From Magallana gigas (Eukaryota): a stretch of DNA of 64,000 nt. The stretch is taken from the NCBI RefSeq assembly GCF_963853765.1, contig NC_088858.1:9176001-9240000 (forward strand), written 5' to 3'. A program made the translations under genes and the position numbers. A model generated the notes under the pieces. That model was not told the origin of the DNA. It saw only the letters and a list, made by a program, of their open reading frames with translations, and made no database searches. This document shows, piece after piece, positions 30,646-48,500 of this stretch. Numbering within the stretch: position 1 is the stretch's first letter; each line of letters starts with the position of its first letter.

Positions 30646-30810
30646 CACGAGCGGATCCTGAAAAATTTTCTACAAGGTTCAAGGAATAATATTTTTTTCC
30701 AGGGTGTCCAGGGCTTATATTCAGGAATTTTACTACGAGAATTTAATCATATGAATTTTCCAAGAAGTCCGACCCCCCCCCCCCCCCCCCCCCGCGGAAG
30801 ATCCGGTGTG
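30646..30810. mobile_element. Short MITE with 5-bp TSD
   Basis: Imperfect TIRs CACGAGCGGATC / GATCCGGTGTG; CATGA flanks both sides (30641-30645, 30811-30815); internal poly-C. Confidence 0.6.
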
Positions 30811-30840
30811 CATGAGATCAGTCTCTCTCTCTCTCTCTCA

Positions 30841-31865
30841 ATAGAATTATAGCGAGCGCAGCTCGCCGGCGCGCAGCGCCGGCGCGAAGCGAGCTCTACC
30901 GGCAAGGCGTGTGTGAATAGAAAATTCGGACTAGTTGCACATTCATTCAACGGATTTTTTTGGCGTCAGTAAATCGGACCAGTAATTCATCGTTTTAATC
31001 GTCCCAGTAGTTCCCTGTAATCATGGCAATTTTTATCACTTCACACTCTCACGAGAATCAGCAAGACAAAACAATAACGATGTAAGCGACATACAGTCAA
31101 TGTTACACTTTCAATCAAAAATAATCGTGTGACGTCACAAACGTTTACACATTCACCCCTGCGAATGTGTTCGGAATGTTTTCTTTATCGTTGCTAAGTT
31201 TGTAATAAATCCAGAGGTGCTCGAATGAAAGTTCACGAGACTTCACCTAGATTTGTTCAGTTCCTGTGGAATTTCGAGCGGAAGTATAAGTGTTCGGATA
31301 ATATTCTCAAAATACGTAGGTACTGGTCGTTTTTCATATCGTATCCTACTTTGGGTTTTATTAAAACATGAAACTCTTTTAATATGTTTGTCTTATTTCA
31401 CCATTTAGCGGTTTTTATATTAAACGATAATATTCAGAACAGAGTTATCGTTCGTGTTCAACCACGTGTTGAGTGGTTGGAAATATAAACATTGCGTGGC
31501 TTAATAAAATGATATCCATGTTTGATGCTTGTGGTGTGCAATACCATGTTTTAAAAAAAATAATGGATGTCTGTTTTGCATAAAAACTTAGTATATCGAG
31601 TCATTTTCAAAGAACATTTTGCAGAAAATAGTATAGTCTTTTTCACTATTGATGCTATTACTAGGTCAGGCGAGGATCGAAAACTAATCCTCAGGGGGGA
31701 TCTTCACTTAGCATGTTAATTGTTGCAACAGCAGACAAAAGTTTTTTTTTTGTATTTTTACATTTATTTCTAGAACACATTTTATCCACCGATTAATGAA
31801 GATAAAGTTTAAAATCAATAAACCTCTAGATTTAATAATTGACTACTATAGTACCTAGATTCTAT
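30841..31865. mobile_element. Probable non-autonomous DNA element with a GC-rich hairpin terminus; family not assigned
   Basis: Abrupt GC-rich nested palindrome at 30852-30896; short ATAGAAT/ATTCTAT ends; CpG-rich interior unlike the flanks. The right boundary is uncertain. Confidence 0.4.
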
Positions 31866-32069
31866 GAACTGAACTATAAACACGAGGCACGATTTTTACT
31901 GCGAAACTAAAAGGGTCAAATAAAACCACGTGGTCTAAAATTTAAATGACAATAACATTCGCAGGGGTGACATTGATCCGATATATTTTTTCGGAGTCAG
32001 TAAATTTTGACCCACAATTCATAGTACCAATGGTTTCCAACCTCACGTTCCAACATCACGTTCTCCCGA

Positions 32070-33492
32070 CAGTGGCGTAGCTAGAGCTAGAACGAAGTAT
32101 AGGCACCAAATACGGCGAGGGGTCGGGTCCAGGGCAGCGCCCTGGTAGGGGGTTCAGGGGGGCGAAGCCCCCCCCCCCCCCGACGGAAAACGGATTTCAT
32201 GTTTTATAGAACACACAGGAACAAATTTTAGGCACTTTTCGTACATAAAATTTTGAGTTTTTTTAAAGATTTTTTTCGTAGTAAAAAAGCAAAAAACATT
32301 TATTAATACAATCCAACATTGTTTTCACCAGCAGTCTTTTTTTAAGCATTATCAAAGTGAATGGCGGGAAGAAACGGGGAAATAAGATAAGGCAAATGCC
32401 CATTCGGTTTCATCGTAAAATACAATTTTGAATTTATTTTATCAATTAAATCAATTCAAATTTATCATAATACAAGTTTGCAAAAGCACAATTTCTAAAT
32501 AAATTAAGTTTTTATTATGTTTAACAAGCGATAGAGAAAATATATTGCCTTAAATTTTGGTGGAATCGAACCCACAACATAAAAACCCTACTTATAGAAG
32601 GTTAGCTAATGTCTGGTGCTCTAACTTCTGAGCCATTTCATACACAACAAAGTAGATTGTTTAAATATCATTTTTTCAAAACGTTCAATTGATGAGATAC
32701 AAAATGAAATTTTTATTGTATAGTGGGTCATCTCTCCACGTTTTTGTTGATTGAAATCGGTTTGTTTTTTCATAAAACTTTAATTAGTCTATGAGAAAAA
32801 TATGGAGCAGAGACTCACTATATAATAAAAAAGACCTTGAAGTTGTAAAAAAAAATGACACTATTGGAAGTTTTGATATACGTATACGCCTGTTTGAGTC
32901 AACATATTCCAAATTTTTTGGTATCTTTTCCGTCCGTGCATAGATATTTTACACGCCTTATCCACCCATCTTCTTACACTAAAGCTATTATCTGTCTCTA
33001 TAGTTAAGTTTACTATTAAAGGGAAAACATAAAGACTTTGAAATTGAATGTCATGATTCAAAAACAGTTGTAATGGTTACTTTAAATTTTGATAATACTT
33101 AGAAAACAGATATATTGCTTTGTTTTTTTTAAAGTCTTACATTATGTTACACGAAGTTAATTTAAGGCGTCGATTTTTATTAGCCGCAAATTTGTAAATG
33201 ATAGTTGAGATCGCAATATGCCTCGATCTATGAATATGATTTTAAACATTTCATCCAGTGTTCTTACTATTGCCCGACATGTTTTTCACTGCCAGATTGA
33301 CTGCGCAATAATTAGCATCATCGATGTCACATATTTGTGACCTCAAACAATCAGAGTTTTAAAATAGGAAAAAGAAAGATATTTGCTGTCTGCTTTTTTT
33401 TTTCTAATGTGACATTTTAACATTTTTAATTTTGGGTCTTAAAATCATGTGTAGGCACGTGCCTTAAGTGCCTAACGGCAGCTACGCCACTG
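32070..33492. mobile_element. 1.4-kb non-autonomous DNA transposon with hAT-like CAGTGGCG termini and 5-bp TSD
   Basis: Perfect 13-bp TIRs CAGTGGCGTAGCT (32070-32082) / AGCTACGCCACTG (33480-33492); CCCGA duplicated at 32065-32069 and 33493-33497; no transposase ORF. Confidence 0.85.
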
Positions 33493-35851: not shown

Positions 35852-36177
35852 CATAGGCGTCGGAACCGGGTTTTTTTTGTTGTTGCAAAGTTAGACCATT
35901 AGGCACATAGCATCATGGAGGGTTCAGCCCCCCCCCCCCCACTTTTTTTCGCAGCAAAGATAATAGTTCCAATATTTACCTTGAAGAGATTGAAATATTA
36001 AGAAGTTGGAGTCATAGGTACACTAGCCCCCCCCCCCCCCCCCCCCTACGGATTAGGATTTTCATGATTTTGGGAATAAGGTGTTATTTTTTTTTTTTCT
36101 TGTGAAGATTTCTGAGGATTAGTCTAGCCCCACCCCCCCCCACCCCCCCCACTTTCAATTTGCTTCCGACGCCACTG
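35852..36177. mobile_element. 326-bp MITE with 5-bp TSD, about 310 bp upstream of the YeeE-like start codon
   Basis: TIRs CATAGGCGTCGGAA / TTCCGACGCCACTG (12/14); CATCT duplicated at 35847-35851 and 36178-36182; internal poly-C tracts. Confidence 0.8.
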
Positions 36178-36488
36178 CATCTCCACCCTCGCGGATTAGA
36201 AATATTAGAGGTTAATCAAGTTAGTTAGTTTGGGTAAGTCTGTCCCATAAAAATGCTGATACGTTCCCGTACAATATTTCCAAAAAAGAACTTTACAGCC
36301 AAACTTATTTTTTTCCGGAGAAAAACCCGTTCAGGGTACCGTATTTTATAACGTTGTTGACATTCCGTTGTAATGCATGGGCCCACATGTAGTATTTTCA
36401 TCAATGATTTAGCATAATTTCTGACGCTTTGTGATATATATTTTTGAAAATAATGAGTTAATGCACTGTGTTGTTGAGTGATCCGAAC

Positions 36489-39400
36489 ATGACGAGCCGG
36501 CGAAATCTACAGGAGGTGCCGATGGGGGATGACAATCGCCCAACCCCCACCAGAACCGTTACATCCCTGGCAGTATCTGCAGCTTGCGGCCTCATGTTTG
36601 GGTTTGCAATTGAAAAAGGAAAAGGTTCAAAAGAACACATTATTTTTTTTTCTATTAATGAAATTGCACAGTGGTACTGTATGTATATACAGTTCCCAAG
36701 CATGCCGACTTAATTGTACATGTGTACTGAGTATTGTATAATGAAAGTAAACAAACTGCATGCATGAGAAGGTTACGTATTTGTACAATACATGTAGATA
36801 CAATGCAAGGACTTCTTTATTATAGTCTAAGTAAAATTGAACCCTGACTTTCCTATTCCTATAATAACTATAATTGATGATCATGAGAAATTGTACATTA
36901 AAATCTGTTAAATTTTCATTTCAGTTTATGAACCTGCTGTAGTAAAAAATCAGATGTTACTTTCACAATTTGTTATGATGAAAATGTTCCTTTCTGGAAT
37001 AATATCAGGTAACAAAAAATTAGCACATGCTTAACCATCTTCAGAATGTCAAAGTTTTGTGGTTTGTGTGAAGTTCTGTAATCACAAAACCTTAATTGAC
37101 ATTTGCTGAGCTGTGAAATGCATTATAAACATTACCTTGTATGTACATGTAAAAAAGGGTGATGCTGGTGAATGGATGATAACTGGTGCAGCTGAATGTT
37201 TTTGCAGGGATGTTTGTATTGGCCGTGATGTCTATGCTGCCGTTCACCAGACGTCAGTACCTGGGGGCTAAGTCCGTCTTCGTGCGGGGTCTCCGTGAGA
37301 AGGGATTCCTGACCACCCTCTCAGGGGGAGCCTTGTTAGGATCAGGGATGGCCATAGCTGGAAGTGTAGGGATACATTTGCGTTTTAAATATTCATAAAT
37401 TTCCATAAAAAAGGAAAATGAAACATGAAACTACATGGACTAGAACAATATTTAGGTTCACACCTGTAACAAGTGTTCACAAGTGTAAAGAGTTGATATA
37501 CTTGTGTGTCATAAATATTTCATATACATGTACTTACTGTCCTTTTGATAACATATATTTATTCTTTAGGGAATAATGCAAGGTAGGATTGTATTCCTCT
37601 AGTGATGTAGGTGCAAGGCACAGGTTTGTCACCTATTCTTGCTTTCTTTTCTTTCCTTCAGTGTCCAGGAGTAATTCTTGCACAGCTTGGATCAGGAACA
37701 CAGAATTCAAGTACATTTTTTCTATCAAATCAAAATATCTAATATGAAAAGTTGTGAAATTCAGATTTGCAGAAACATGCAAGACTGACTTATATATCAC
37801 ATACTTTTTTCACCCTGTTATCTATGACTAGAAAACAGTGCACATTCTTCTATAAAAAAGATACACCTTATGAGGTGCCATTGTAGTATTTTCAAGTTAC
37901 ATGTATTTTCAAATGTACATGTGTGATATCAAAAATGATTATTGTTATCATTGACCATAATTTCATAACCAGTATTTATTATTAAAAAAATAAGCAGAGT
38001 ATCAGATGTACAATTTTTTTTTTTTTTTTATGTGTATTGTGAAATGACTTGAACAGTTATAATCATGTTGTCTTTAGAATCCATAAAAATTTGAAAAAAT
38101 GCCTTGCAAAAGGATAACTCTGATGTTAACTGCATAAAAATTTTGTGGTTAACATGCTATTTGTGATTAAATTACAGTGTACACATTACTGGGAGCATTA
38201 TTCGGGACCCTGCTCTATGGGATCCTAGAACCAGTCGTCACAGACCTGACCAAACCAGCACAAACGATACGATTCCAATTGTAAGGATCACTTAACCCAT
38301 CGTTAAAAACAGCTAAATTAAATTATTAAATTCAAAACTGCTCTCTGGAGTACATCTATTATAAACATTGATTTTATGCTGATTGCATGATGCTGATTTT
38401 GATTGCAGTTTGTACAATGTGTATGGATCTCCCTTCTTTGTGATGGCCTTGCCATCTGCTGCAGTTCTTTCCTTAGTTGTGTTCACTTTGGAGTTAGCTT
38501 ATCCCTGGGAAGAAGAAATAAATGTAAAGTATTTTATAGTTAATCAGTAGCTATAACTGCATACGAACAGTTCAATATATCACATTTTGCTAGTACAACG
38601 TGTGTACTGATTTTAATATTCTAAATGCATACCTTGTATTTTATTGACAGATTACAGACTCTGTCTACCAATCTAGCAGCTGGATTACCTCCCCTGCATG
38701 GCCACCATTTGTATCTGGAATTGCTGTTGGCAGTTTGCAAATACCTGTTGTATTAGTCATTGGAGACACCTTAGGTATAAAGTATATTCTAATAAGCTGA
38801 ATTACTAACAAATGTATTGTGAATTGATGGAATTCTATGGTACATGTACTAGTATGCCATTATTTACCTGAATGTTTAAATGCACGATGAAAGATAGTTC
38901 AGTGTATGTAATATTCCCTTGTGATTTATTTCATTGACAGGAGCCAGCAGTAGCTTCTGTACCATCACGTCTCAGTTTTTTCTTCACAAGTCCTCTAAGA
39001 GATTATCACCTTATCTCCTGAAATTCCAATCAGGCATTGAAAATTGGTGGCAGGTACAGAATCTTGTCAATGTCATCATAGTACATATGTTCAATTTTTC
39101 TCTAAATTACTGAAAAAGAAAAAAATGGTTTGTTTTCCTATCCATTGACAGGTTGCATTTGTTTTGAGCTCTATATTTGGGGCTTTCTTGTCCTCTATCC
39201 TGTCTGGGACGTACGGTTCTGTGGCAGGAGTCTCCATTGTTCAGTCATTTGTTGGAGGAGCTCTGATACTGTTTGGAGCCCGAATGGCTGGAGGATGTAC
39301 CAGGTATACACCATAATACATGTACACTCTGAAATACACTGTATCTCTGGAGGATGTACCAGGTATACACCATAATACAGGTACACTCTGAAATACACTG

Positions 39401-42400
39401 TATCTCTGGAGGATGTACCAGGTATACACCATAATACAGGTACACTCTGAAATACACTGTATCTTTGGAGGATGTACCAGGTATACACCATAATACACGC
39501 TCACTCTGAAATACACTGTATCTCTGGAGGATGTACCAGGTATACACCATAATACACGTACACTCTGTAATACACTGTATCTCTGGAGGATGTACCAGGT
39601 ATACACCATAATACACGTACACTCTGAAATACACTGTATCTCTGGAGGATGTACCAGGTATACACCATAATACACGTACACTCTGTAATACAATGTATCT
39701 CTGGAGGATGTACCAGGTATACACCATAATACACGTACACTCTGAAATACACTGTATCTCTGGAGGATGTACCAGGTATACACCATAATACAGGTACACT
39801 CTGAAATACACTGTATCTCTGGAGGATGTACCAGGTATACACCATAATACATGTACACTCTGAAATACACTGTATCTCTGGAGGATGTACCAGGTATACA
39901 CCATAATACATGTACACTCTGAAATACACTGTATCTCTGGAGGATGTACCAGGTATACACCATAATACAGGTACACTCTGAAATACACTGTATCTCTGGA
40001 GGATGTACCAGGTATACACCATAATACACGTACACTCTGTAATACACTGTATCTCTGGAGGATGTACCAGGTATACACCATAATACACGTACACTCTGTA
40101 ATACAATGTATCTCTGGAGGATGTACCAGGTATACACCATAATACACGCTCACTCTGAAATACACTGTATCTCTGGAGGATGTACCAGGTATACACCATA
40201 ATACAGGTACACTCTGAAATACACTGTATCTCTGGAGGATGTACCAGGTATACACCATAATACACGTACACTCTGAAATACACTGTATCTCTGGAGGATG
40301 TACCAGGTATACACCACAATACACGTACACTCTGAAATACACTGTATCTCTGGAGGATGTACCAGGTATACACCACAATACACGTACACTCTGAAATACA
40401 CTGTATCTCTGGAGGATGTACCAGGTATACACCATAATACACGTACACTCTGAAATACACTGTATCTCTGGAGGATGTACCAGGTATACACCATAATACA
40501 CGTACACTCTGAAATACACTGTATCTCTGGACGATGTACCAGGTATACACCATAATACACGTACACTCTGTAATACAATGTATCTCTGGAGGATGTACCA
40601 GGTATACACCATAATACACGTACACTCTGAAATACACTGTATCTCTGGAGGATGTACCAGGTATACACCATAATACACGTACACTCTGTAATACAATGTA
40701 TCTCTGGAGGATGTATCAGGTATACCATAATACACGTACACTCTGAAATACACTGTATCTCTGGAGGATGTACCAGGTATACACCACAATACACGTACAC
40801 TCTGCAATACAATGCATCTCTGGAGGATGTATCAGGTATACCATAATACACGTACACTCTGAAATACACTGTATCTCTGGAGGATGTACCAGGTATACAC
40901 CATAATACACGTACACTCTGCAATACACTGTATCTCTGGAGGATGTACCAGGTATACACCATAATACACGTACACTCTGAAATACACTGTATCTCTGGAG
41001 GATGTACCAGGTATACACCATAATACACGTACACTCTGGAATACACCGTATCTCTGGAGGATGTACCAGGTATACACCATAATACACGTACACTCTGAAA
41101 TACACCGTATCTCTGGAGGATGTACCAGGTATACACCATAATACACGCTCACTCTGAAATACACCGTATCTCTGGAGGATGTACCAGGTATACACCATAA
41201 TACACGTACACTCTGAAATACACTGTATCTCTGGAGCATGTACCAGGTATACACCATAATACACGCTCACTCTGAAATACACTGTATCTCTGGAGGATGT
41301 ACCAGGTATACACCATAATACACGTACACTCTGAAATACACTGTATCTCTGGAGGATGTACCAGGTATACACCACAATACACGTACACTCTGAAATACAC
41401 TGTATCTCTGGAGGATGTACCAGGTATACACCACAATACACGTACACTCTGTAATACACTGTATCTCTGGAGGATGTACCAGGTATACACCACAATACAC
41501 GTACACTCTGAAATACACTGTATCTCTGGAGGATGTACCAGGTATACACCATAATACACGTACGCTCTGAAATACACTGTATCTCTGGAGGATGTACCAG
41601 GTATACACCACAATACACGTACGCTCTGAAATACACTATCTCTGGAGGATGTACCAGGTATACACCAGAATACACGTACGCTCTGAAATACACTATCTCT
41701 GGAGGATGTACCAGGTATACACCATAATACATGTACGCTCTGAAATACACTGTATCTCTGGAGGATGTACCAGGTATACACCATAATACACGTACACTCT
41801 GAAATACACTGTATCTCTGGAGGATGTACCAGGTATACACCATAATACACGTACACTCTGAAATACAATGTATCTCTGGAGGATGTACCAGGTATACACC
41901 ATAATACACGTACACTCTGCAATACAATGTATCTCTGGAGGATGTACCAGGTATACACCATAATACACGTACACTCTGAAATACACTGTATCTTTGGAGG
42001 ATGTACCAGGTATACACCATAATACACGTACACTCTGAAATACACCGTATCTCTGGAGGATGTACCAGGTATACACCATAATACACGTACACTCTGAAAT
42101 TACTGTATCTCTGACACTTTGTCAACAATACAAGTGCATGTATGGAAACAAAATGTACATGTACACAAAACTTCCCAAGTTTAACCTTGTAGAATAATTT
42201 TATTGTAAAGAATATACTATTTAAACTTTTAAGATTGACCTTAGGATTGCGAGTAATTTTATGTGACCCTGACTACATTTTGTAAGATCATATGTAGTTC
42301 CACATTTATGCACGGAAAATTAAGATTGAATATAAAAGGCTTAAAAGGAAAAAAGAATTCAGACCGACCCAAATAATAACATTTATACATGCATACAATT

Positions 42401-42705
42401 CTTAGGTATTCAGGAGAGCATGAAATATTATGGGTAATATCAGAATACCTCATACTCTCAAAAAGTAAAAATCTCACAAATAAATTTTTAAAAAATATGG
42501 TAAAAGTTATCTGGAAAAAGCATTTATTTACAAGTGATTCTTTTGTAAATCCTTTTAAATAACAAATCTTTAATGAATGTTTCCTCTTTATAGTGGGCAT
42601 GGACTCTCTGGAATAGGTTTATTAAACCTTCTGTCCATCAGCACCATGGCTGCAATGTTTGTTGGGGGAGTTTTAACAGCCATGATCCTGCAGTGGATCA
42701 GTTAG
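36489..42705 (+). CDS. YeeE/YedE family (Sulf_transp, thiosulfate transporter TsuA-like) multi-pass membrane protein, 381 aa, 10 exons
   Basis: Exons 36489-36624, 36925-37008, 37208-37365, 37662-37710, 38178-38280, 38409-38523, 38651-38774, 38941-39053, 39152-39303, 42594-42705 (1146 nt, phases consistent). Family motifs: FGFAIEKGKVYEP..NQM...FVMMKMFLS; GGALLGSGMAIAGSCPGVILAQLG; WPPFVSGIAVGSLQ; LGASSSFCT; FVGGALILFGARMAGGCTSGHGLSG. Many hydrophobic Gly-rich segments. Confidence 0.88.
39288..42110 (+). repeat. 59-bp minisatellite, 48 units, spanning the exon 9/intron 9 boundary of the YeeE-like gene
   Basis: Consensus CTGGAGGATGTACCAGGTATACACCATAATACACGTACACTCTGAAATACACTGTATCT. I counted 48 units (four of 57 bp, the last of 58 bp). 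The first 16 nt of unit 1 are coding. Confidence 0.97.
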
Positions 42706-45567
42706 AGAACTGTATACATGTAACAGACCAAAGACAATGTACATTCACTGCTTATATTTTGTATTTTCACAATTTATCATTTACATTTTATTTTACATAC
42801 ATTTCTGTTAAAAAGAATTTGTTAATAAAAATTCCAAGCAAAGAAGTTTTGTTTTTACTAAGGAAGATAATAATCTTGCACCATTTTTAGCAGATATGTT
42901 TGTGAAAATGGAAGGGCTTTTGTTTAGATGAAAATTCATTGGATATGTTGTGTCATCAAGGTGACAATATTAACATACTACCCTTTCCTCAACAATAGAA
43001 AATAAGACACAAATGTAACACATCATAAATATTTATTATGCTATCTATAATCTAAGAAACTAACAATTACATGAAATTACAACACTAAAGCCTAAAATAC
43101 CTTATAAAGGTCGTCTTACTTCAATGCAGCTCTTCAGGAGTTATCATTATAATAACAACACTGAACCCTAAAATACCTTAAAGGCCATCTCAGTTTAATG
43201 CAGTTCTTATGAAGTAGTTTAGTTCTAATTTTTAAGGTACATTATATTGCTATGATTTTAATTTGAAATAAGTCGTATCTTTTCATCAAAAGTTACATTT
43301 TAATAGCAAAAATTCTTACTACCCTACTTGTGTTTTAAATTTTCTGACAGAAAATGTACAATTATTTTTTATCTTTTAGATGTCAACCTAAAAAATTATG
43401 CACTAATTAATTATTCCTGAAACTGCATTAATCAAATTAATTCAACGGCTTTTATAATAAATCAAGTGAAAAAAAAATAAATCACACCTTCTGCCCTTCA
43501 AGATGTACAAAAACTTCTTATTTATAGAATGTGGCCTCATTTGTCTTTTTTAAATAATCATTCAAATAATTTAGGAGAGGTTAGGTTATTTGCTCTTGTA
43601 TACAGACAGACAGGTTCCGTTACTGGCAATTTACATCAGTGACTCTAATGAGTTTAGCAAAGAGAATACTTATAATCTGTAAATTATTAGAATCAAAATC
43701 TGTACATTTTTTTCTTTTGGGGGAAAAATTCCCAGTGCAAGTCATATAAACTTGAAAAATTAAGCTGCATTTTAAGGGATGTTGTCAAAAACCGCTCATT
43801 TTTCAATTAAGAACTGTGCTATACTGATCAGTAGCATAAACAGTCAAACTTAAAGTTCTTGAACTGATTTTAATACACATGTACATATGTATGAATATAT
43901 TGAATAATTTTGTATGTCTTACATCAAAATATTCAGAAAACCTAAGTGCCAATAATTCCGATACACTTTGTTTTTCATCCAACAACATAATTCTATAAAC
44001 TTATTTTATATAATGAGCACTTTAAAATATTGAATATTCAAATTCTTTCATTTAACGGTATACAACAACAAAAACAGACAAAATTGTCTTTTATCTGATA
44101 ACAGAAATAAAATACATGTGTATAACTTAAAATGTATAACTTTCATTAGAAATGCTAAATCAAGAAAAGGGGTTTTAATCATATAAAACCATTTGCTTTT
44201 TTTTTTAATTTTAGATTCAAATTATTGATTTGTTCCTTGCTTAAATGAAAATGTTATACAATTGTTTTCATGTTATTCAATTTTGCAATTTCCATACAAA
44301 TAACAAATATAAAGTGCATGTACTGATAAATGGGAAAGAATTCATATAGCTATAGGGAAAAGCTTGGGAGAAATAGGACTTGTGTTTTATCAATAATAAA
44401 AGTCTTCACAAACTTTTTTAGGTTTTAAAAATTACAAATTAGATCTTTCTGAGCATTTTATATTCTGAATACACAATATTATAATGTGTCCTAATAACAC
44501 CATATTTTAACATTATGTACCCCCATTTTTTTTCTGATGTGAATAACCGCAGAGCTGATTTTACACAGATTAAAATTAAAATTTTTCTAAATGTATACTA
44601 GTATTAAAGCATAAAACTGTACAAGTTGCATGAAAAAAACCCCAAACAAAATAAAATCATGTGATTTTTTTCAATGTTAGAAACATTATAAGCAGTTTTC
44701 ATATACTCCCACGGGCATGCAGTCTACATTTCTAATATTTGTTAGATCATGATATCAAAACGTTAAATAAATCATGTTCATTATAATGATAAAAGAAACT
44801 TGTAGTATAATAAAATATTTTTTAAAGTTCCCTCCTCCCAGCAAATATTGTTTTTTTTTTAAAAATTCCTAATTTGCTAAATCTTATTCATCTAAAACAA
44901 TAATTTGTCCAAAATACAACAGAAACTGTCAACAAAGATGAAAAAAAAAATGAAAAGTGACTCCAAAACTGAAAGATGTACAATTTACATGAATGTAAAG
45001 AAAATGTAAAATATTGTAATAAAAGAAATGCTAAGTTCCTGTAGTAGTACATGTGTATACAAGCCTCAGGATTCATACAGGTGCAAAAAGATTACCTGTT
45101 TACCATTAACTACTAAGTATCAGAAGCCAAATTTTATTACCAGTACATGTACTAAGTACTATCCAAGGAATTCAACCTTCTAGTATTTGGCATGTACATT
45201 ACATCACACAACAAGTTTGCGAGGATAAATATCTGCAAGTTTGGTGGTAAATCTCCAGGATTTTTTTTTTCATTCCTGTATAATAGTATAAGCTTAAAAG
45301 TTTAAAATAAAATGATTGCTGGATTCATTCAAAATAGTTCTGTCATATGTCATGATAAAATCTGCTGCCATTCAGATATGTTGTTTTAAAATGGAATTAC
45401 AAAAGGGATACTCTTTAAAATTGTCAACATGCTATATATATATTAATATCATATCTATAAAAAACAATTTTCAGTGCTCTATAAAAATATAGTAACTAGT
45501 GTGTTTAAAGCATCATTGATCCCTATTCTAAACATGACAATCTTTGGCCAGCTTTTGTTGAGAAGAC

Positions 45568-48500
45568 CTAGGAGTCCTGGTTTCTTGAGTATGGATGTGG
45601 ATTACAGCTAAGTCCCTGTCTCTTCGAGCGTCGGTAGGCAAGCATTGGGACCTGAACGCCACTGGCCTCCGACCCCAATTTATTCCCAGGGATCCAATTC
45701 ATGCCATGCATCATTTGGTTCCCCATGCTACTCTCTGGAACAAGTTTAGTACATCTATCATTAATAGTTGGTCCAGTTTCAATGGACAAACAGGTACATA
45801 AGACCAATTATCAGTACGAGGGTTGTTCGGAAATTATTGAGACATTTACTCTTATTTCCTTAGGGAAAAAGATAAACCCTTCAAATTTCCCCAAAATGTA
45901 AACCAGGATAGGGTTCATCACTGCGAAAAGTTTTGTGTCCATAGCCTGATTAGATCATTCCTGGTAAACTGACCAACTTGCCTTCGTCCAGTGGACCGGC
46001 GCAACCGCAAACTTACCGCAATGGCATTTTAACGCAGCTCATTGGTCCTATGTTTTAAACACCTTACAAACAAAATTAAATAGAATTAATTTTTCATTTC
46101 TCATCTTTTGTTTACATTTTAAGATGTCAACATTCGCACATTCTCTCCATTCTAGATTTTTGTGGAAAAAATCGGGTTATTTCTAAGCAAAAGTCAAATT
46201 ACTGTAAGATGTCTCCTACAGTCATTCTGTGTACATATTTTAGAACTGTTGACATTTGTAAGTGTGTAAAAAGTACTTGATATTTAGTCACTTTGTCTGA
46301 ATTCTAGTTAATCAATTAGTGAACAAAGACGATAAACTGAAGCTCTTTATCCCTTGCCATCGTAATTTTTTTGTTAAAGCAATTGGGTGCCCTGAAAAAG
46401 GTTTTTTCCGAAATTTCCACCAATTTGATGATATTCGCTGCGCCGCATTGACGTCAAAATTCAATATACCGTCGCTGTCAGATTTCTATTGCTTGGTAAA
46501 TATACCTGTACCATATCCGTATTTCAACTCGAACAGTAGTGAAACTTGATCAAAAGTTAGTCACAAAAAATAGCAAAATGAAAATATATAATCTGATTTC
46601 TTTTATTATAAACGGTAAGTTTGCGGACACTTAGATAGATGAAGTTGTAGTTTTATTATTCTCCGAGTTTATGCTTGCGCCGGGTACCCCGACCACCGAT
46701 TTGTTAACTACCGTTGTAAACAAAATATCAAACATTTTCTAAATATTACTTTCTTTAATTATTTGTTAAGGTTTCTTCAATGTTCATGCCAATTTTCACC
46801 CTAATTCGTCACTTAGAAAGGGAAATATCCGAGTTGTCTCAATAATTTCAGAACAACCCTCGTATATGTAACACCATAAGAAAGGTTAAAATGAATGCAG
46901 ATTTTTTTTCATCTCAACAGCAAGCACTCCACCCCACCCTTCAAAATAAATTAAATAAAAATCTACAAGTATTACCAGTGTACATATATATTCTATAAAA
47001 GGGGTATGAGGCTTTAAGAAGAAAGCTCTTTCAGTTATCAGTGTACACAAACAAAGAGAAAGTTAAGTTAATAAATTTACTATTTATCCAAATGTTATAG
47101 AAAGTTGAAGATTATTATCACATGTGTACATGAAGTTTTACAAAGCCAAATGATATCTACCCTCTTCTGATGGACTTTGGAGTGGTGGTGTCTTGCGGAA
47201 TCTCTTCTGATCCCCATTCCCACCAGACTTGAAGCTTGATGGTAGATTTTCTTGTATATCATGCCACCTCTGTCTCTCTTTCAGAAAGCGAGACAAAGTG
47301 TAACCGGGTCCCTGTAATATAATGATATTACCGGTGTCTAACAATCTATGTGTATCATCGCCTAAATTCAAAGCAAAGATGCACATGTACAATAAAAAGT
47401 TTGATCTACAGGAAAATCTATTCAAACTCATCTTATGACATGTTGCTTTTATTCACAATACATGTAGTTGTACATGTAAACTATATATATCAATTCATCA
47501 TATTTTAATCAATTACCGGTACTGAAAACTCACCTTTTCTTTTAATTTTCTTCTTCCAAATCTGATTGGTCTTCCAGACTGTAAAAAATTTTGTTCGTGA
47601 AACTTTACTTATATGCCTGGTTCTTTATATACCTGATAGACTATTACACATTCTTTGCCAATCCTTGTTTTACCAATTGAAAGTAAACTACAGTAGAAAA
47701 TCAGTTAACATCTTTAAGATTCGTTCTTATAACGTAATCATACCTTGGCCATCATTCTAGTCACCCTAGCCCTGAACGCCAGCTGTGAAGACTTTGGTAC
47801 ATACTGGTCCAGTGAGCTGGACAGAATCTGCTGGAACTGACGGTCAGACTCCGACTCAATGTCCCCAGAATCATTCTCCCACCATCGGATTATTCCTGGA
47901 TTTCCACAAGCTGGTCCCGACTCATAATAAAAATCACTGTGCTCATCATCAGCTGAAGAAGAAAGTAAAAAATATTCTCTTGCAGTTTTCTAAGTCAATC
48001 TGTAAATGCAATGTAATTTTTGCAAACAGTTTTTTTTCTTCAAAATAAGATAAATGTGCGTTGAAATATACATATCTACATGCACTTTACATCAAACTAT
48101 CATTTTTAAAACAAAGATTAAAGTGTTGGGTTCATTACAAGTACAGGTATATCTATATGAGTCTATCAAGCTACTTTTGGACAAAAACAAATTTCTCATA
48201 TTTAAAATGAAATAACTAATTATTTTTCATTATTTTCTTCTTGGTATGTCACATTGATTTAAAAAAAAATATACTACAGCCATAAAACTGACCTTCTCTT
48301 GCTTCATCATTGGTCAGCAAACCATCACTCTCACTGCTGCTGAGACCAGAACTACTCTCCCTGTAAGATGTACATAGTAAATATATATTAAAAGGAACAT
48401 TTACTATTTAAAAATAAGAAACAGTCTTTTGGTATCTAATATGTACAAGACAAAAAAATCCCTCAAATTCAATATGAAAAGAAAAAAATAATGTCTGTAA

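What the first reader, a model, noticed from the sequence alone, without database searches (positions are those of the whole stretch)
39288..42110. 48-copy minisatellite built from a splice junction: an array of seamless GT...CAG mini-introns / recursive-splice sites in the YeeE-like gene
Seen: the 59-bp unit is the last 16 coding nt of exon 9 (encoding the conserved A-G-G-C-T-S motif) plus the donor GTATAC and the rest of the first 43 intron nt. All 48 units keep CAG|GTATAC. The stretch from one GT to the next CAG is 59 nt, starts GT and ends CAG, so excising any whole number of units regenerates the identical donor. The array inflates intron 9 to 3290 nt, whereas the other eight introns are 98-467 nt. 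Read-through past donor 1 hits an in-frame TAA at 39314-39316, so using a downstream donor without excising the units between gives a truncated or NMD product. Established: AG|GT junctions are recursive ('ratchet') splice sites, and tandem duplication of AGGT is a proposed route to intron gain. Inference: the array may be removed stepwise, act as a set of decoy donors, or work as a copy-number rheostat on transporter expression. The units have only a weak pyrimidine tract and no clear branch point.
Basis: partly seen in the sequence, partly recalled or inferred. Interest (0 to 1): 0.82.

Follow-up and report, generated by a model that had tools for sequence, protein, structure and literature searches.

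The report
Splice-donor minisatellite in oyster TsuA intron
The last intron of the Pacific oyster's thiosulfate-transporter (YeeE/TsuA-like) gene holds 48 tandem copies of its own exon-end-plus-splice-donor, but assembled mRNAs join the first copy straight to the last exon; repeats of this kind are already known from human F7 and amphioxus "mirages", so it is real but ordinary.

Summary
A 59-bp minisatellite lies at 39288-42113 (48.1 copies, 96% matches). Its first unit is the last 16 nt of exon 9 plus the first 43 nt of intron 9. All 48 units keep CAGGTATAC. Small corrections: 4 of the 47 spacings are 57 nt, not 59, and unit 48 carries an indel.

The host is Magallana gigas "thiosulfate transporter TsuA" (XP_011432323.3, 381 aa). 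It has 10 exons, and intron 9 (3290 nt) is the last intron.

- Ten RNA-seq contigs from ten runs all join 39303 directly to 42594.
- A genomic contig from a second oyster breaks exactly 30 nt into unit 1. That is what a repeated unit predicts, so an assembly artefact is unlikely.
- Three other oyster species and two in-genome paralogues have the same intron position and phase, with introns of 159-1257 nt and no array. The array is therefore young and lineage-specific.
- The units' internal CAG sits in a poorer acceptor context than all nine real acceptors of the gene.
- No variation in the 9-mer is what chance would give for so young an array.

The architecture is known: human F7 IVS7, IFI6, CBS, LMNB2 and PDGF, and amphioxus "mirages". 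There the first donor, or the first few, are used. This scan has noted the same kind at other genes of this genome. Stepwise, decoy or rheostat roles remain untested.

The parts
36489..42705 (+). CDS span of the host gene, M. gigas thiosulfate transporter TsuA / YeeE-like. Exons: 36489-36624, 36925-37008, 37208-37365, 37662-37710, 38178-38280, 38409-38523, 38651-38774, 38941-39053, 39152-39303, 42594-42705.
   Evidence: Hand model; each exon's translation found in order in P0167 = XP_011432323.3; the same junctions in 10 cDNA contigs; exon 9 hits Pfam PF04143 at 30.6 bits against a cut-off of 27.
39152..39303 (+). Exon 9, ending ...GARMAGGCT + AG (split Ser codon).
39288..42113 (+). 59-bp minisatellite: 48 units plus a terminal CTG. 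Unit 1 spans the exon 9/intron 9 boundary.
   Evidence: The unit is found only at this locus in the 564-Mb genome.
39301..39309 (+). Authentic 5' splice site CAG|GTATAC (cleavage after 39303), the site seen in mRNA.
   Evidence: 10 of 10 cDNA contigs end exon 9 at 39303.
39360..42074 (+). 47 reiterated pseudo-donors CAG|GTATAC. The first 9-mer starts at 39360 and the last at 42066.
39314..39316 (+). In-frame TAA reached if donor 1 is read through. The product would end ...GGCTRYTP and lose the last 37 residues.
   Evidence: the genomic ORF P0001 ends the same way.
42114..42593 (+). Unique 3' part of intron 9 (480 nt), with the real pyrimidine tract and the TAG acceptor.
42594..42705 (+). Exon 10, the last coding exon including the stop. 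The 3' UTR runs on to at least 45735.
   Evidence: L017 aligns from 42592 to 45735.

Best explanation
This is a young, lineage-specific minisatellite of the 'mirage' / F7-IVS7 type. A 59-bp segment straddling the exon 9/intron 9 boundary of the oyster TsuA gene was duplicated in tandem. The segment is bounded by a 3-nt CTG microhomology. Ordinary minisatellite turnover (slippage, unequal exchange) then expanded it to 48 copies. The first copy is still the true exon end and donor. The other 47 are intronic pseudo-donors, and the mature mRNA joins 39303 to 42594. The first donor is probably chosen by position: 5'-to-3' co-transcriptional or scanning-type selection together with definition of the 152-nt exon 9, as shown experimentally for human F7. 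The array most likely has no selected function. Shown: the anatomy, the junction used in mRNA, absence in relatives, and presence of a repeated unit in a second individual. Inferred: the mode of origin, why donor 1 wins, and neutrality.
For: Anatomy. mRNA: ten Logan RNA-seq contigs from ten runs carry an uninterrupted CDS and align 39303|42594, with all nine introns removed. Only the gene and two diverged paralogues match exon 9 in the genome, so the contigs do not come from a retrocopy. The RefSeq protein equals the model. Full-length homologues across animals read GGCTSGHG over this junction. Youth and lineage specificity: intron 9 sits at the same position and phase with no array in C. virginica (159 nt), S. 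cucullata (445 nt), O. edulis (1257 nt) and two paralogues of about 270 and 665 nt. Without the 47 extra units the intron would be about 520 nt. Turnover signature: variants cluster regionally (G34/T34 in units 1-16, G39 in 39-42, C53 in 30-32) and the edge unit 48 is the most divergent. Not an artefact: genomic contig L015 from another M. gigas run shares common exon 9 SNPs with the cDNAs. It ends at window 39317, exactly 30 nt into unit 1, where a k=31 graph must branch if the unit is repeated (k=31 for Logan is from my own knowledge). Precedent: F7, IFI6, CBS, LMNB2 and PDGF minisatellites span the boundary, and the first donor or the first two or three are used (PMC1557585). Amphioxus mirages do not disturb splicing (PMC3087553).
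Against: None of the ten cDNA contigs has exactly the window's exon 9 haplotype. Canonical splicing of the 48-copy allele itself is therefore inferred, though RefSeq models it so. Assembled contigs hide rare isoforms and nuclear intermediates. Copy number in other individuals is unknown. Neutrality is an inference. The scan's notes of several such arrays in this genome (unchecked here) could point to a mechanism that seeds them at donors.
Confidence: 0.8

Rival explanations
1. Stepwise (recursive) removal: donor 1 is spliced to an internal CAG, which regenerates CAG|GTATAC, or single 59-nt units are excised as mini-introns. The array would then be removed in several steps before the final join to exon 10.
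For: Every unit boundary is formally AG|GT, and excising whole units regenerates the donor. Mature mRNA cannot tell this apart from direct splicing. Length alone is no bar: a 56-nt human intron is used as a splicing model (abstract of 10.1101/784868, listed).
Against: The 22 nt upstream of the internal CAG are 50% pyrimidine and 32% T, with no yTnAy motif. That is lower than all nine real acceptors of the gene (55-95% pyrimidine, 41-68% T). The smallest real intron here is 98 nt. The intron is only 3.3 kb, far below those where recursion is documented (my own knowledge). The sites are absent from orthologues. In the published junction minisatellites the upstream-most donor is simply selected (PMC1557585).
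Confidence: 0.1
2. Functional decoy or rheostat: the 47 pseudo-donors bind U1 or are used at some rate, giving truncated or NMD-targeted transcripts. Array length would then tune transporter output and would be under selection.
For: The pseudo-donors are identical to the real one. It matches 6 of 9 consensus positions, among the better donors of this gene. Using donor 3 or any later donor places the TAA more than 100 nt before the last junction. In IFI6 and CBS the two proximal pseudo-sites are used alongside the authentic one (PMC1557585).
Against: 10 of 10 mRNA contigs run straight through the canonical junction. No separate truncated ...GGCTRYTP isoform cluster turned up among close relatives. 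Only 13 unit positions carry substitutions, so zero hits in the 9-mer has a probability of about 0.1 by my hand estimate, not a tool result (itself gave 0.007, using a count of 23 positions inflated by misaligned indel units). The array is absent in sister oysters, whose orthologues are otherwise intact.
Confidence: 0.07
3. Assembly artefact: the array, or its length, is an error of the assembly.
For: Long tandem arrays can be mis-sized, and only one assembly was available here.
Against: The units carry 25 distinct GT-to-CAG sequence variants with regional structure. At 2.8 kb the array is shorter than typical long reads. An independent short-read contig from another oyster breaks exactly at the k-1 boundary of unit 1.
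Confidence: 0.02

Closest known systems
Human F7 intron 7 VNTR (37 bp, 5-9 copies), with the IFI6 (6-16), CBS IVS13, LMNB2 and PDGF junction minisatellites (Borensztajn et al. 2006, PMC1557585)
   Same: The first monomer spans the exon-intron boundary, so the authentic donor is followed by identical pseudo-donors. mRNA uses the most upstream site, or the first two or three in IFI6 and CBS. The array is removed with the intron.
   Different: Here the host is a mollusc and there are 48 copies, more than any copy number quoted in that paper (up to 26 donors in IFI6). The unit carries 16 exonic nt against 4 in F7. No mutational or minigene data exist for this array.
Amphioxus 'mirage' minisatellites (Adh3, globins BflGb6/BflGb9; Ebner et al. 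2010, PMC3087553)
   Same: An invertebrate tandem repeat spanning an exon-intron boundary that carries AG/GT signals. Regular splicing is undisturbed. Evolution is concerted, with the edge units diverging.
   Different: The globin mirages have 150-160-bp units in 2-6 copies and can involve the acceptor side. Copy-number and somatic instability were shown there and not tested here.
Recursive (ratchet) splice sites of long Drosophila and vertebrate introns
   Same: A juxtaposed AG|GT that would regenerate a donor after splicing.
   Different: Those sites have strong pyrimidine tracts, lie in very long introns and are conserved (my own knowledge). Here the tract is weak, the intron is 3.3 kb and the sites are lineage-specific.
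Other junction minisatellites noted by this scan in the same genome (THOC2/ALKBH8, ERCC6L, ADAMTS9, Vps34, an EF-hand gene)
   Same: The same architecture in the same oyster genome. Follow-ups there also report first-donor use.
   Different: Different genes and units. Those notes were not checked here.

Membership tests
Exon-intron-boundary minisatellite (F7-IVS7 / 'mirage' type) | Tandem array whose first monomer spans an exon-intron boundary | tested here: met
   Unit 1 is 39288-39346, made of 16 nt of exon 9 and 43 nt of intron 9.
Exon-intron-boundary minisatellite (F7-IVS7 / 'mirage' type) | [quoted passage not shown] | tested here: met
   48 copies of CAGGTATAC, none elsewhere in the window.
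Exon-intron-boundary minisatellite (F7-IVS7 / 'mirage' type) | Mature mRNA uses the most upstream donor, or the first few | tested here: met
   10 of 10 RNA-seq contigs join 39303 to 42594. Caveat: none carries the window's exact haplotype, and rare isoforms cannot be seen.
Exon-intron-boundary minisatellite (F7-IVS7 / 'mirage' type) | Lineage-specific and length-variable (VNTR behaviour) | tested here: inconclusive
   Absent in three oyster orthologues and two paralogues. A repeated unit is present in a second individual. Copy-number variation could not be measured.
Recursive splice site | Juxtaposed 3' and 5' splice-site motifs, (Y)nNCAG|GTRAGT, with a strong pyrimidine tract | tested here: not met
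   AG|GT is present, but the tract is 50% pyrimidine and 32% T with no yTnAy, below all nine real acceptors. The donor is GTATAC.
Recursive splice site | Evolutionary conservation of the site within a long intron | tested here: not met
   The orthologous introns are 159-1257 nt and hold no such sites.
Recursive splice site | RNA evidence: intermediate junctions, lariats, saw-tooth nascent profile | not testable with these tools
   Only assembled mature transcripts were available.
YeeE/YedE/TsuA sulphur-transport family (Pfam PF04143), host gene | Match to the family profile above the curated cut-off | tested here: met
   Exon 9 alone scores 30.6 bits against a cut-off of 27 and 37.1 bits in the genome scan. 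Full-length relatives carry PF04143 and are named TsuA or YeeE-like.

The most novel reading that the evidence does not exclude
The array is not inert. Either its 47 U1-binding pseudo-donors and AG|GT joints are used in the nucleus (stepwise removal, transient decoy pairing), so that copy number tunes TsuA output. Or, more broadly, the oyster genome has a process that seeds minisatellites preferentially at 5' splice sites; several other cases were noted by this scan in the same genome, unchecked here.
Probability: 0.1. Interest if true: 0.6.

Novelty: new member of a known kind. Interest (0 to 1): 0.25.

Why it matters
As it stands this is one more example of a known curiosity, although a large one and the first noted for this gene: 48 identical donors competing for one acceptor. 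Its practical value is as a natural test bed for 5' splice-site choice in a mollusc. It is also a caution for gene prediction: an older oyster model, K1PMH0, mis-joins exactly here. It may also serve as a polymorphic marker. It would matter more if copy number were shown to affect expression, or if such arrays proved to be enriched at donors across the oyster genome.

Tried and rejected
- Word search with the 55-aa exon 9 open stretch found nothing, because of the tool's length window.
- Pfam on the other eight exons searched one by one gave no hits, as they are too short. Exon 4 (16 aa) is below the tool's minimum and was not searched.
- RNA folding of exon 9 plus five units was uninformative: z = -2.1, expected for repeated sequence.
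- Test for selection on the junction: the raw count of 23 polymorphic positions, and its P of 0.007, were inflated by misaligned indel units. After correction there are 13 substituted positions and none in the 9-mer, which my hand estimate puts at a chance of about 0.1. I do not claim constraint.
- Looking for a truncated ...GGCTRYTP isoform among close relatives found no separate cluster. Only 15 of the 103 members of the main cluster could be listed, so a rare isoform is not excluded.
- The RefSeq protein could not be traced to a second M. gigas assembly, because records of the window's own genome are withheld.
- Literature searches for oyster minimum intron length and for F7 repeat number against expression gave nothing citable.
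- The joined spliced model was never submitted to any search. Exons were searched one by one by reference, and full-length comparisons used database proteins returned by the tools.
Full report
**Observation.** TRF reports a single array at 39288-42113: period 59, 48.1 copies, 96% matches, no indels at that resolution, score 5176. It is the only large minisatellite in the 64-kb window; the others have 2-4.5 copies. Printing the array in register and anchoring on the junction shows CAGGTATAC 48 times inside the array and nowhere else in the window. Spacing is 59 nt in 43 cases and 57 nt in 4. Units 25 and 27 lost an AC just after GTATAC, and units 40 and 41 lost a GT. Unit 48 has a 1-nt indel. 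After the 48th unit comes CTG and then unique intron, so the duplicated segment is flanked by a CTG microhomology (CTGGAGG... at the start, CTGACAC... after the end). The unit matches only this locus in the 564-Mb genome.

**Host gene.** I placed ten exons by reading frames and splice signals. They give a 1146-nt CDS (381 codons plus stop), with introns of 300, 199, 296, 467, 128, 127, 166, 98 and 3290 nt. Exon 9 (39152-39303) ends ...GARMAGGCT plus AG. Exon 10 starts at 42594 and supplies the T of the Ser codon, then GHGLSG... and the stop. Intron 9 is therefore the last intron. Exon 9 alone passes the Pfam Sulf_transp (PF04143) cut-off.

The joined model was not submitted to any search. Exons were searched singly by reference. 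An exhaustive search with exon 9 led through scallop P0050 to the cluster that holds Magallana gigas XP_011432323.3, "thiosulfate transporter TsuA", 381 aa (P0167). Every exon translation occurs in that protein in order, separated only by the split-codon residues.

**What the mRNA looks like.** P0170 is the same protein from Met12 with one residue different. It is encoded without interruption on ten Logan contigs from ten different sequencing runs. Aligned to the window, each contig shows all nine introns removed at exactly the modelled junctions, and exon 9 ends at 39303 joined to 42594. One contig continues as 3' UTR to 45735. Exon 9 matches only the gene itself and two diverged paralogues in the genome. 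The contigs therefore come from spliced RNA and not from a retrocopy. Full-length homologues from molluscs, echinoderms, brachiopods and protists all read GGCTSGHG across this junction.

The caveat is that the contigs come from other individuals. Each differs from the window by at least one synonymous SNP in exon 9. Assembled contigs also cannot show rare isoforms or nuclear intermediates. A word search with the full protein found no separate cluster of a truncated ...GGCTRYTP form.

**Is the array real, and how old is it?** The best exon 9 hit, P0001, is a genomic open stretch running through exon 8, intron 8 and exon 9 and ending ...GGCTRYTP. Its contig (L015, run SRR32147187) aligns to window 38168-39317 at 97.8%. 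It shares the common exon 9 SNPs seen in the cDNAs, so it comes from another M. gigas. It stops exactly 30 nt into unit 1. In a k=31 de Bruijn graph (Logan's k, from my own knowledge) that is where the path must branch if the unit is preceded both by exon sequence and by another unit. So at least two copies exist in an independent animal.

The orthologous intron sits at the same position and phase in three other oysters and has no array:

- Crassostrea virginica: 159 nt
- Saccostrea cucullata: 445 nt
- Ostrea edulis: 1257 nt

The two in-genome paralogues on contig 1 also share the position (TGTACAAG|GTACGTG), with introns of about 270 and 665 nt and no array there. Without the 47 extra units the M. 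gigas intron would be about 520 nt. The junction is ancient; the array is a recent derivative in the M. gigas lineage.

**Internal variation.** Only 13 of the 59 unit positions carry substitutions, plus three indels. Variants are clustered along the array (G34/T34 in units 1-16, C27 in 18-19 and 36-40, G39 in 39-42, C53 in 30-32), and the last unit is the most divergent. This is the usual signature of unequal exchange with edge units escaping homogenisation. None of the 13 variable positions falls in the 9-mer CAGGTATAC. By my hand estimate, not a tool result, that has a chance probability of roughly 0.1. The figure of 0.007 printed used a count inflated by misaligned indel units. The perfect retention of the junction therefore needs no selection.

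**Can the units act as mini-introns or recursive sites?** Formally yes. Any tandem copy of an AG|GT junction yields periods that start GT and end AG, so the "seamless" property is automatic. Functionally the signals are poor. The 22 nt before the internal CAG are 50% pyrimidine and 32% T with no yTnAy motif. The nine real acceptors have 55-95% pyrimidine and 41-68% T. The shortest real intron in the gene is 98 nt. The donor CAG|GTATAC matches 6 of 9 consensus positions, among the better donors of this gene, so the pseudo-donors are plausible U1 sites.

If a downstream donor were used, translation would stop at 39314-39316 and the last 37 residues would be lost. From donor 3 onward the stop lies more than 100 nt before the last junction, which would make the transcript an NMD target if the usual rule holds in molluscs (inference).

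**What is known.** My first literature search returned Borensztajn et al. 2006 (PMC1557585). Human F7 intron 7 holds a 37-bp VNTR whose first monomer spans the exon 7 boundary. The identical pseudo-donors are functional but silent, because the most upstream site is chosen by a 5'-to-3' scanning-type process. The paper lists four further cases:

- IFI6: 25 pseudo-sites; the authentic donor and the two proximal pseudo-sites are used.
- CBS: 15-20 repeats; the authentic donor and two pseudo-sites are used.
- LMNB2: only the authentic donor is used.
- PDGF: only the authentic donor is used.

In amphioxus, such boundary-spanning repeats are called "mirages". They do not disturb splicing and show concerted evolution and length instability (PMC3087553). 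The present array meets the defining features of this class that could be tested. It fails the tested features of recursive splice sites.

The scan's own notes list the same architecture at several other genes of this genome: THOC2/ALKBH8, ERCC6L, ADAMTS9, Vps34 130 kb upstream of this window, and an EF-hand gene. The scan has therefore found this kind before on other DNA of the same genome. I did not check those notes.

**Verdict.** The array is a real, lineage-specific junction minisatellite of a known kind. It is notable only for its 48 copies. The most likely mechanism is passive: the whole array is excised as part of intron 9 from the first donor (confidence about 0.8). Stepwise removal (about 0.1), a selected decoy or rheostat role (about 0.07) and assembly artefact (about 0.02) remain as rivals. 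RNA from genotyped animals would decide between them.

Noticed in passing
window 37366-37385; locus L030: One RNA-seq contig (L030, protein P0211, 218 aa) extends exon 3 by about 19-20 nt past its weak AGT|GTAGGG donor before joining exon 4. This shifts the frame. The junction is not an obvious GT donor in the window's haplotype. It may be a minor mis-spliced isoform or an assembly chimera.
   Followed up: partly
L014:2381-2841 (paralogue on G000 contig 1, gene on the minus strand): A 42-bp minisatellite of about 11 copies at 72% identity lies in the paralogue, upstream of its exon 7/8. On the gene strand its units contain GGGGTGTAAGT, which looks like a donor. I did not establish whether it also derives from an exon-intron junction.
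   Followed up: no
L013:1825-2001 and L014:1742-1918, against window 38651-39053: In both paralogues the stretches matching exons 7 and 8 are contiguous (…DTLGSS…). The window's gene has a 166-nt phase-1 intron 7 there. This is an intron presence/absence difference within the family.
   Followed up: no
window 39265-39303 / protein P0095 (UniProt K1PMH0): The older M. gigas gene model K1PMH0 (359 aa) lacks exon 2 and jumps from ...GGALIL straight to GHGLSG, dropping FGARMAGGCTS. This is a likely misprediction right at the array-bearing junction.
   Followed up: no
window 30646-30849, 32011-32253, 35911-36225: Open stretches rich in proline or glycine runs (PPPPPP / GGGGGG) recur upstream of the gene. 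They suggest copies of a repeated element with C/G homopolymer tracts.
   Followed up: no
window 39304-39346 and 42114-42200: The unit is itself loosely built from sub-repeats of about 18 nt (AATACAC..GTA..CTCTG; TRF period 18 at about 60% matches). The unique intron after the array is rich in the same TGTAC/ATACA motifs. Pre-existing low complexity may have favoured slippage.
   Followed up: partly
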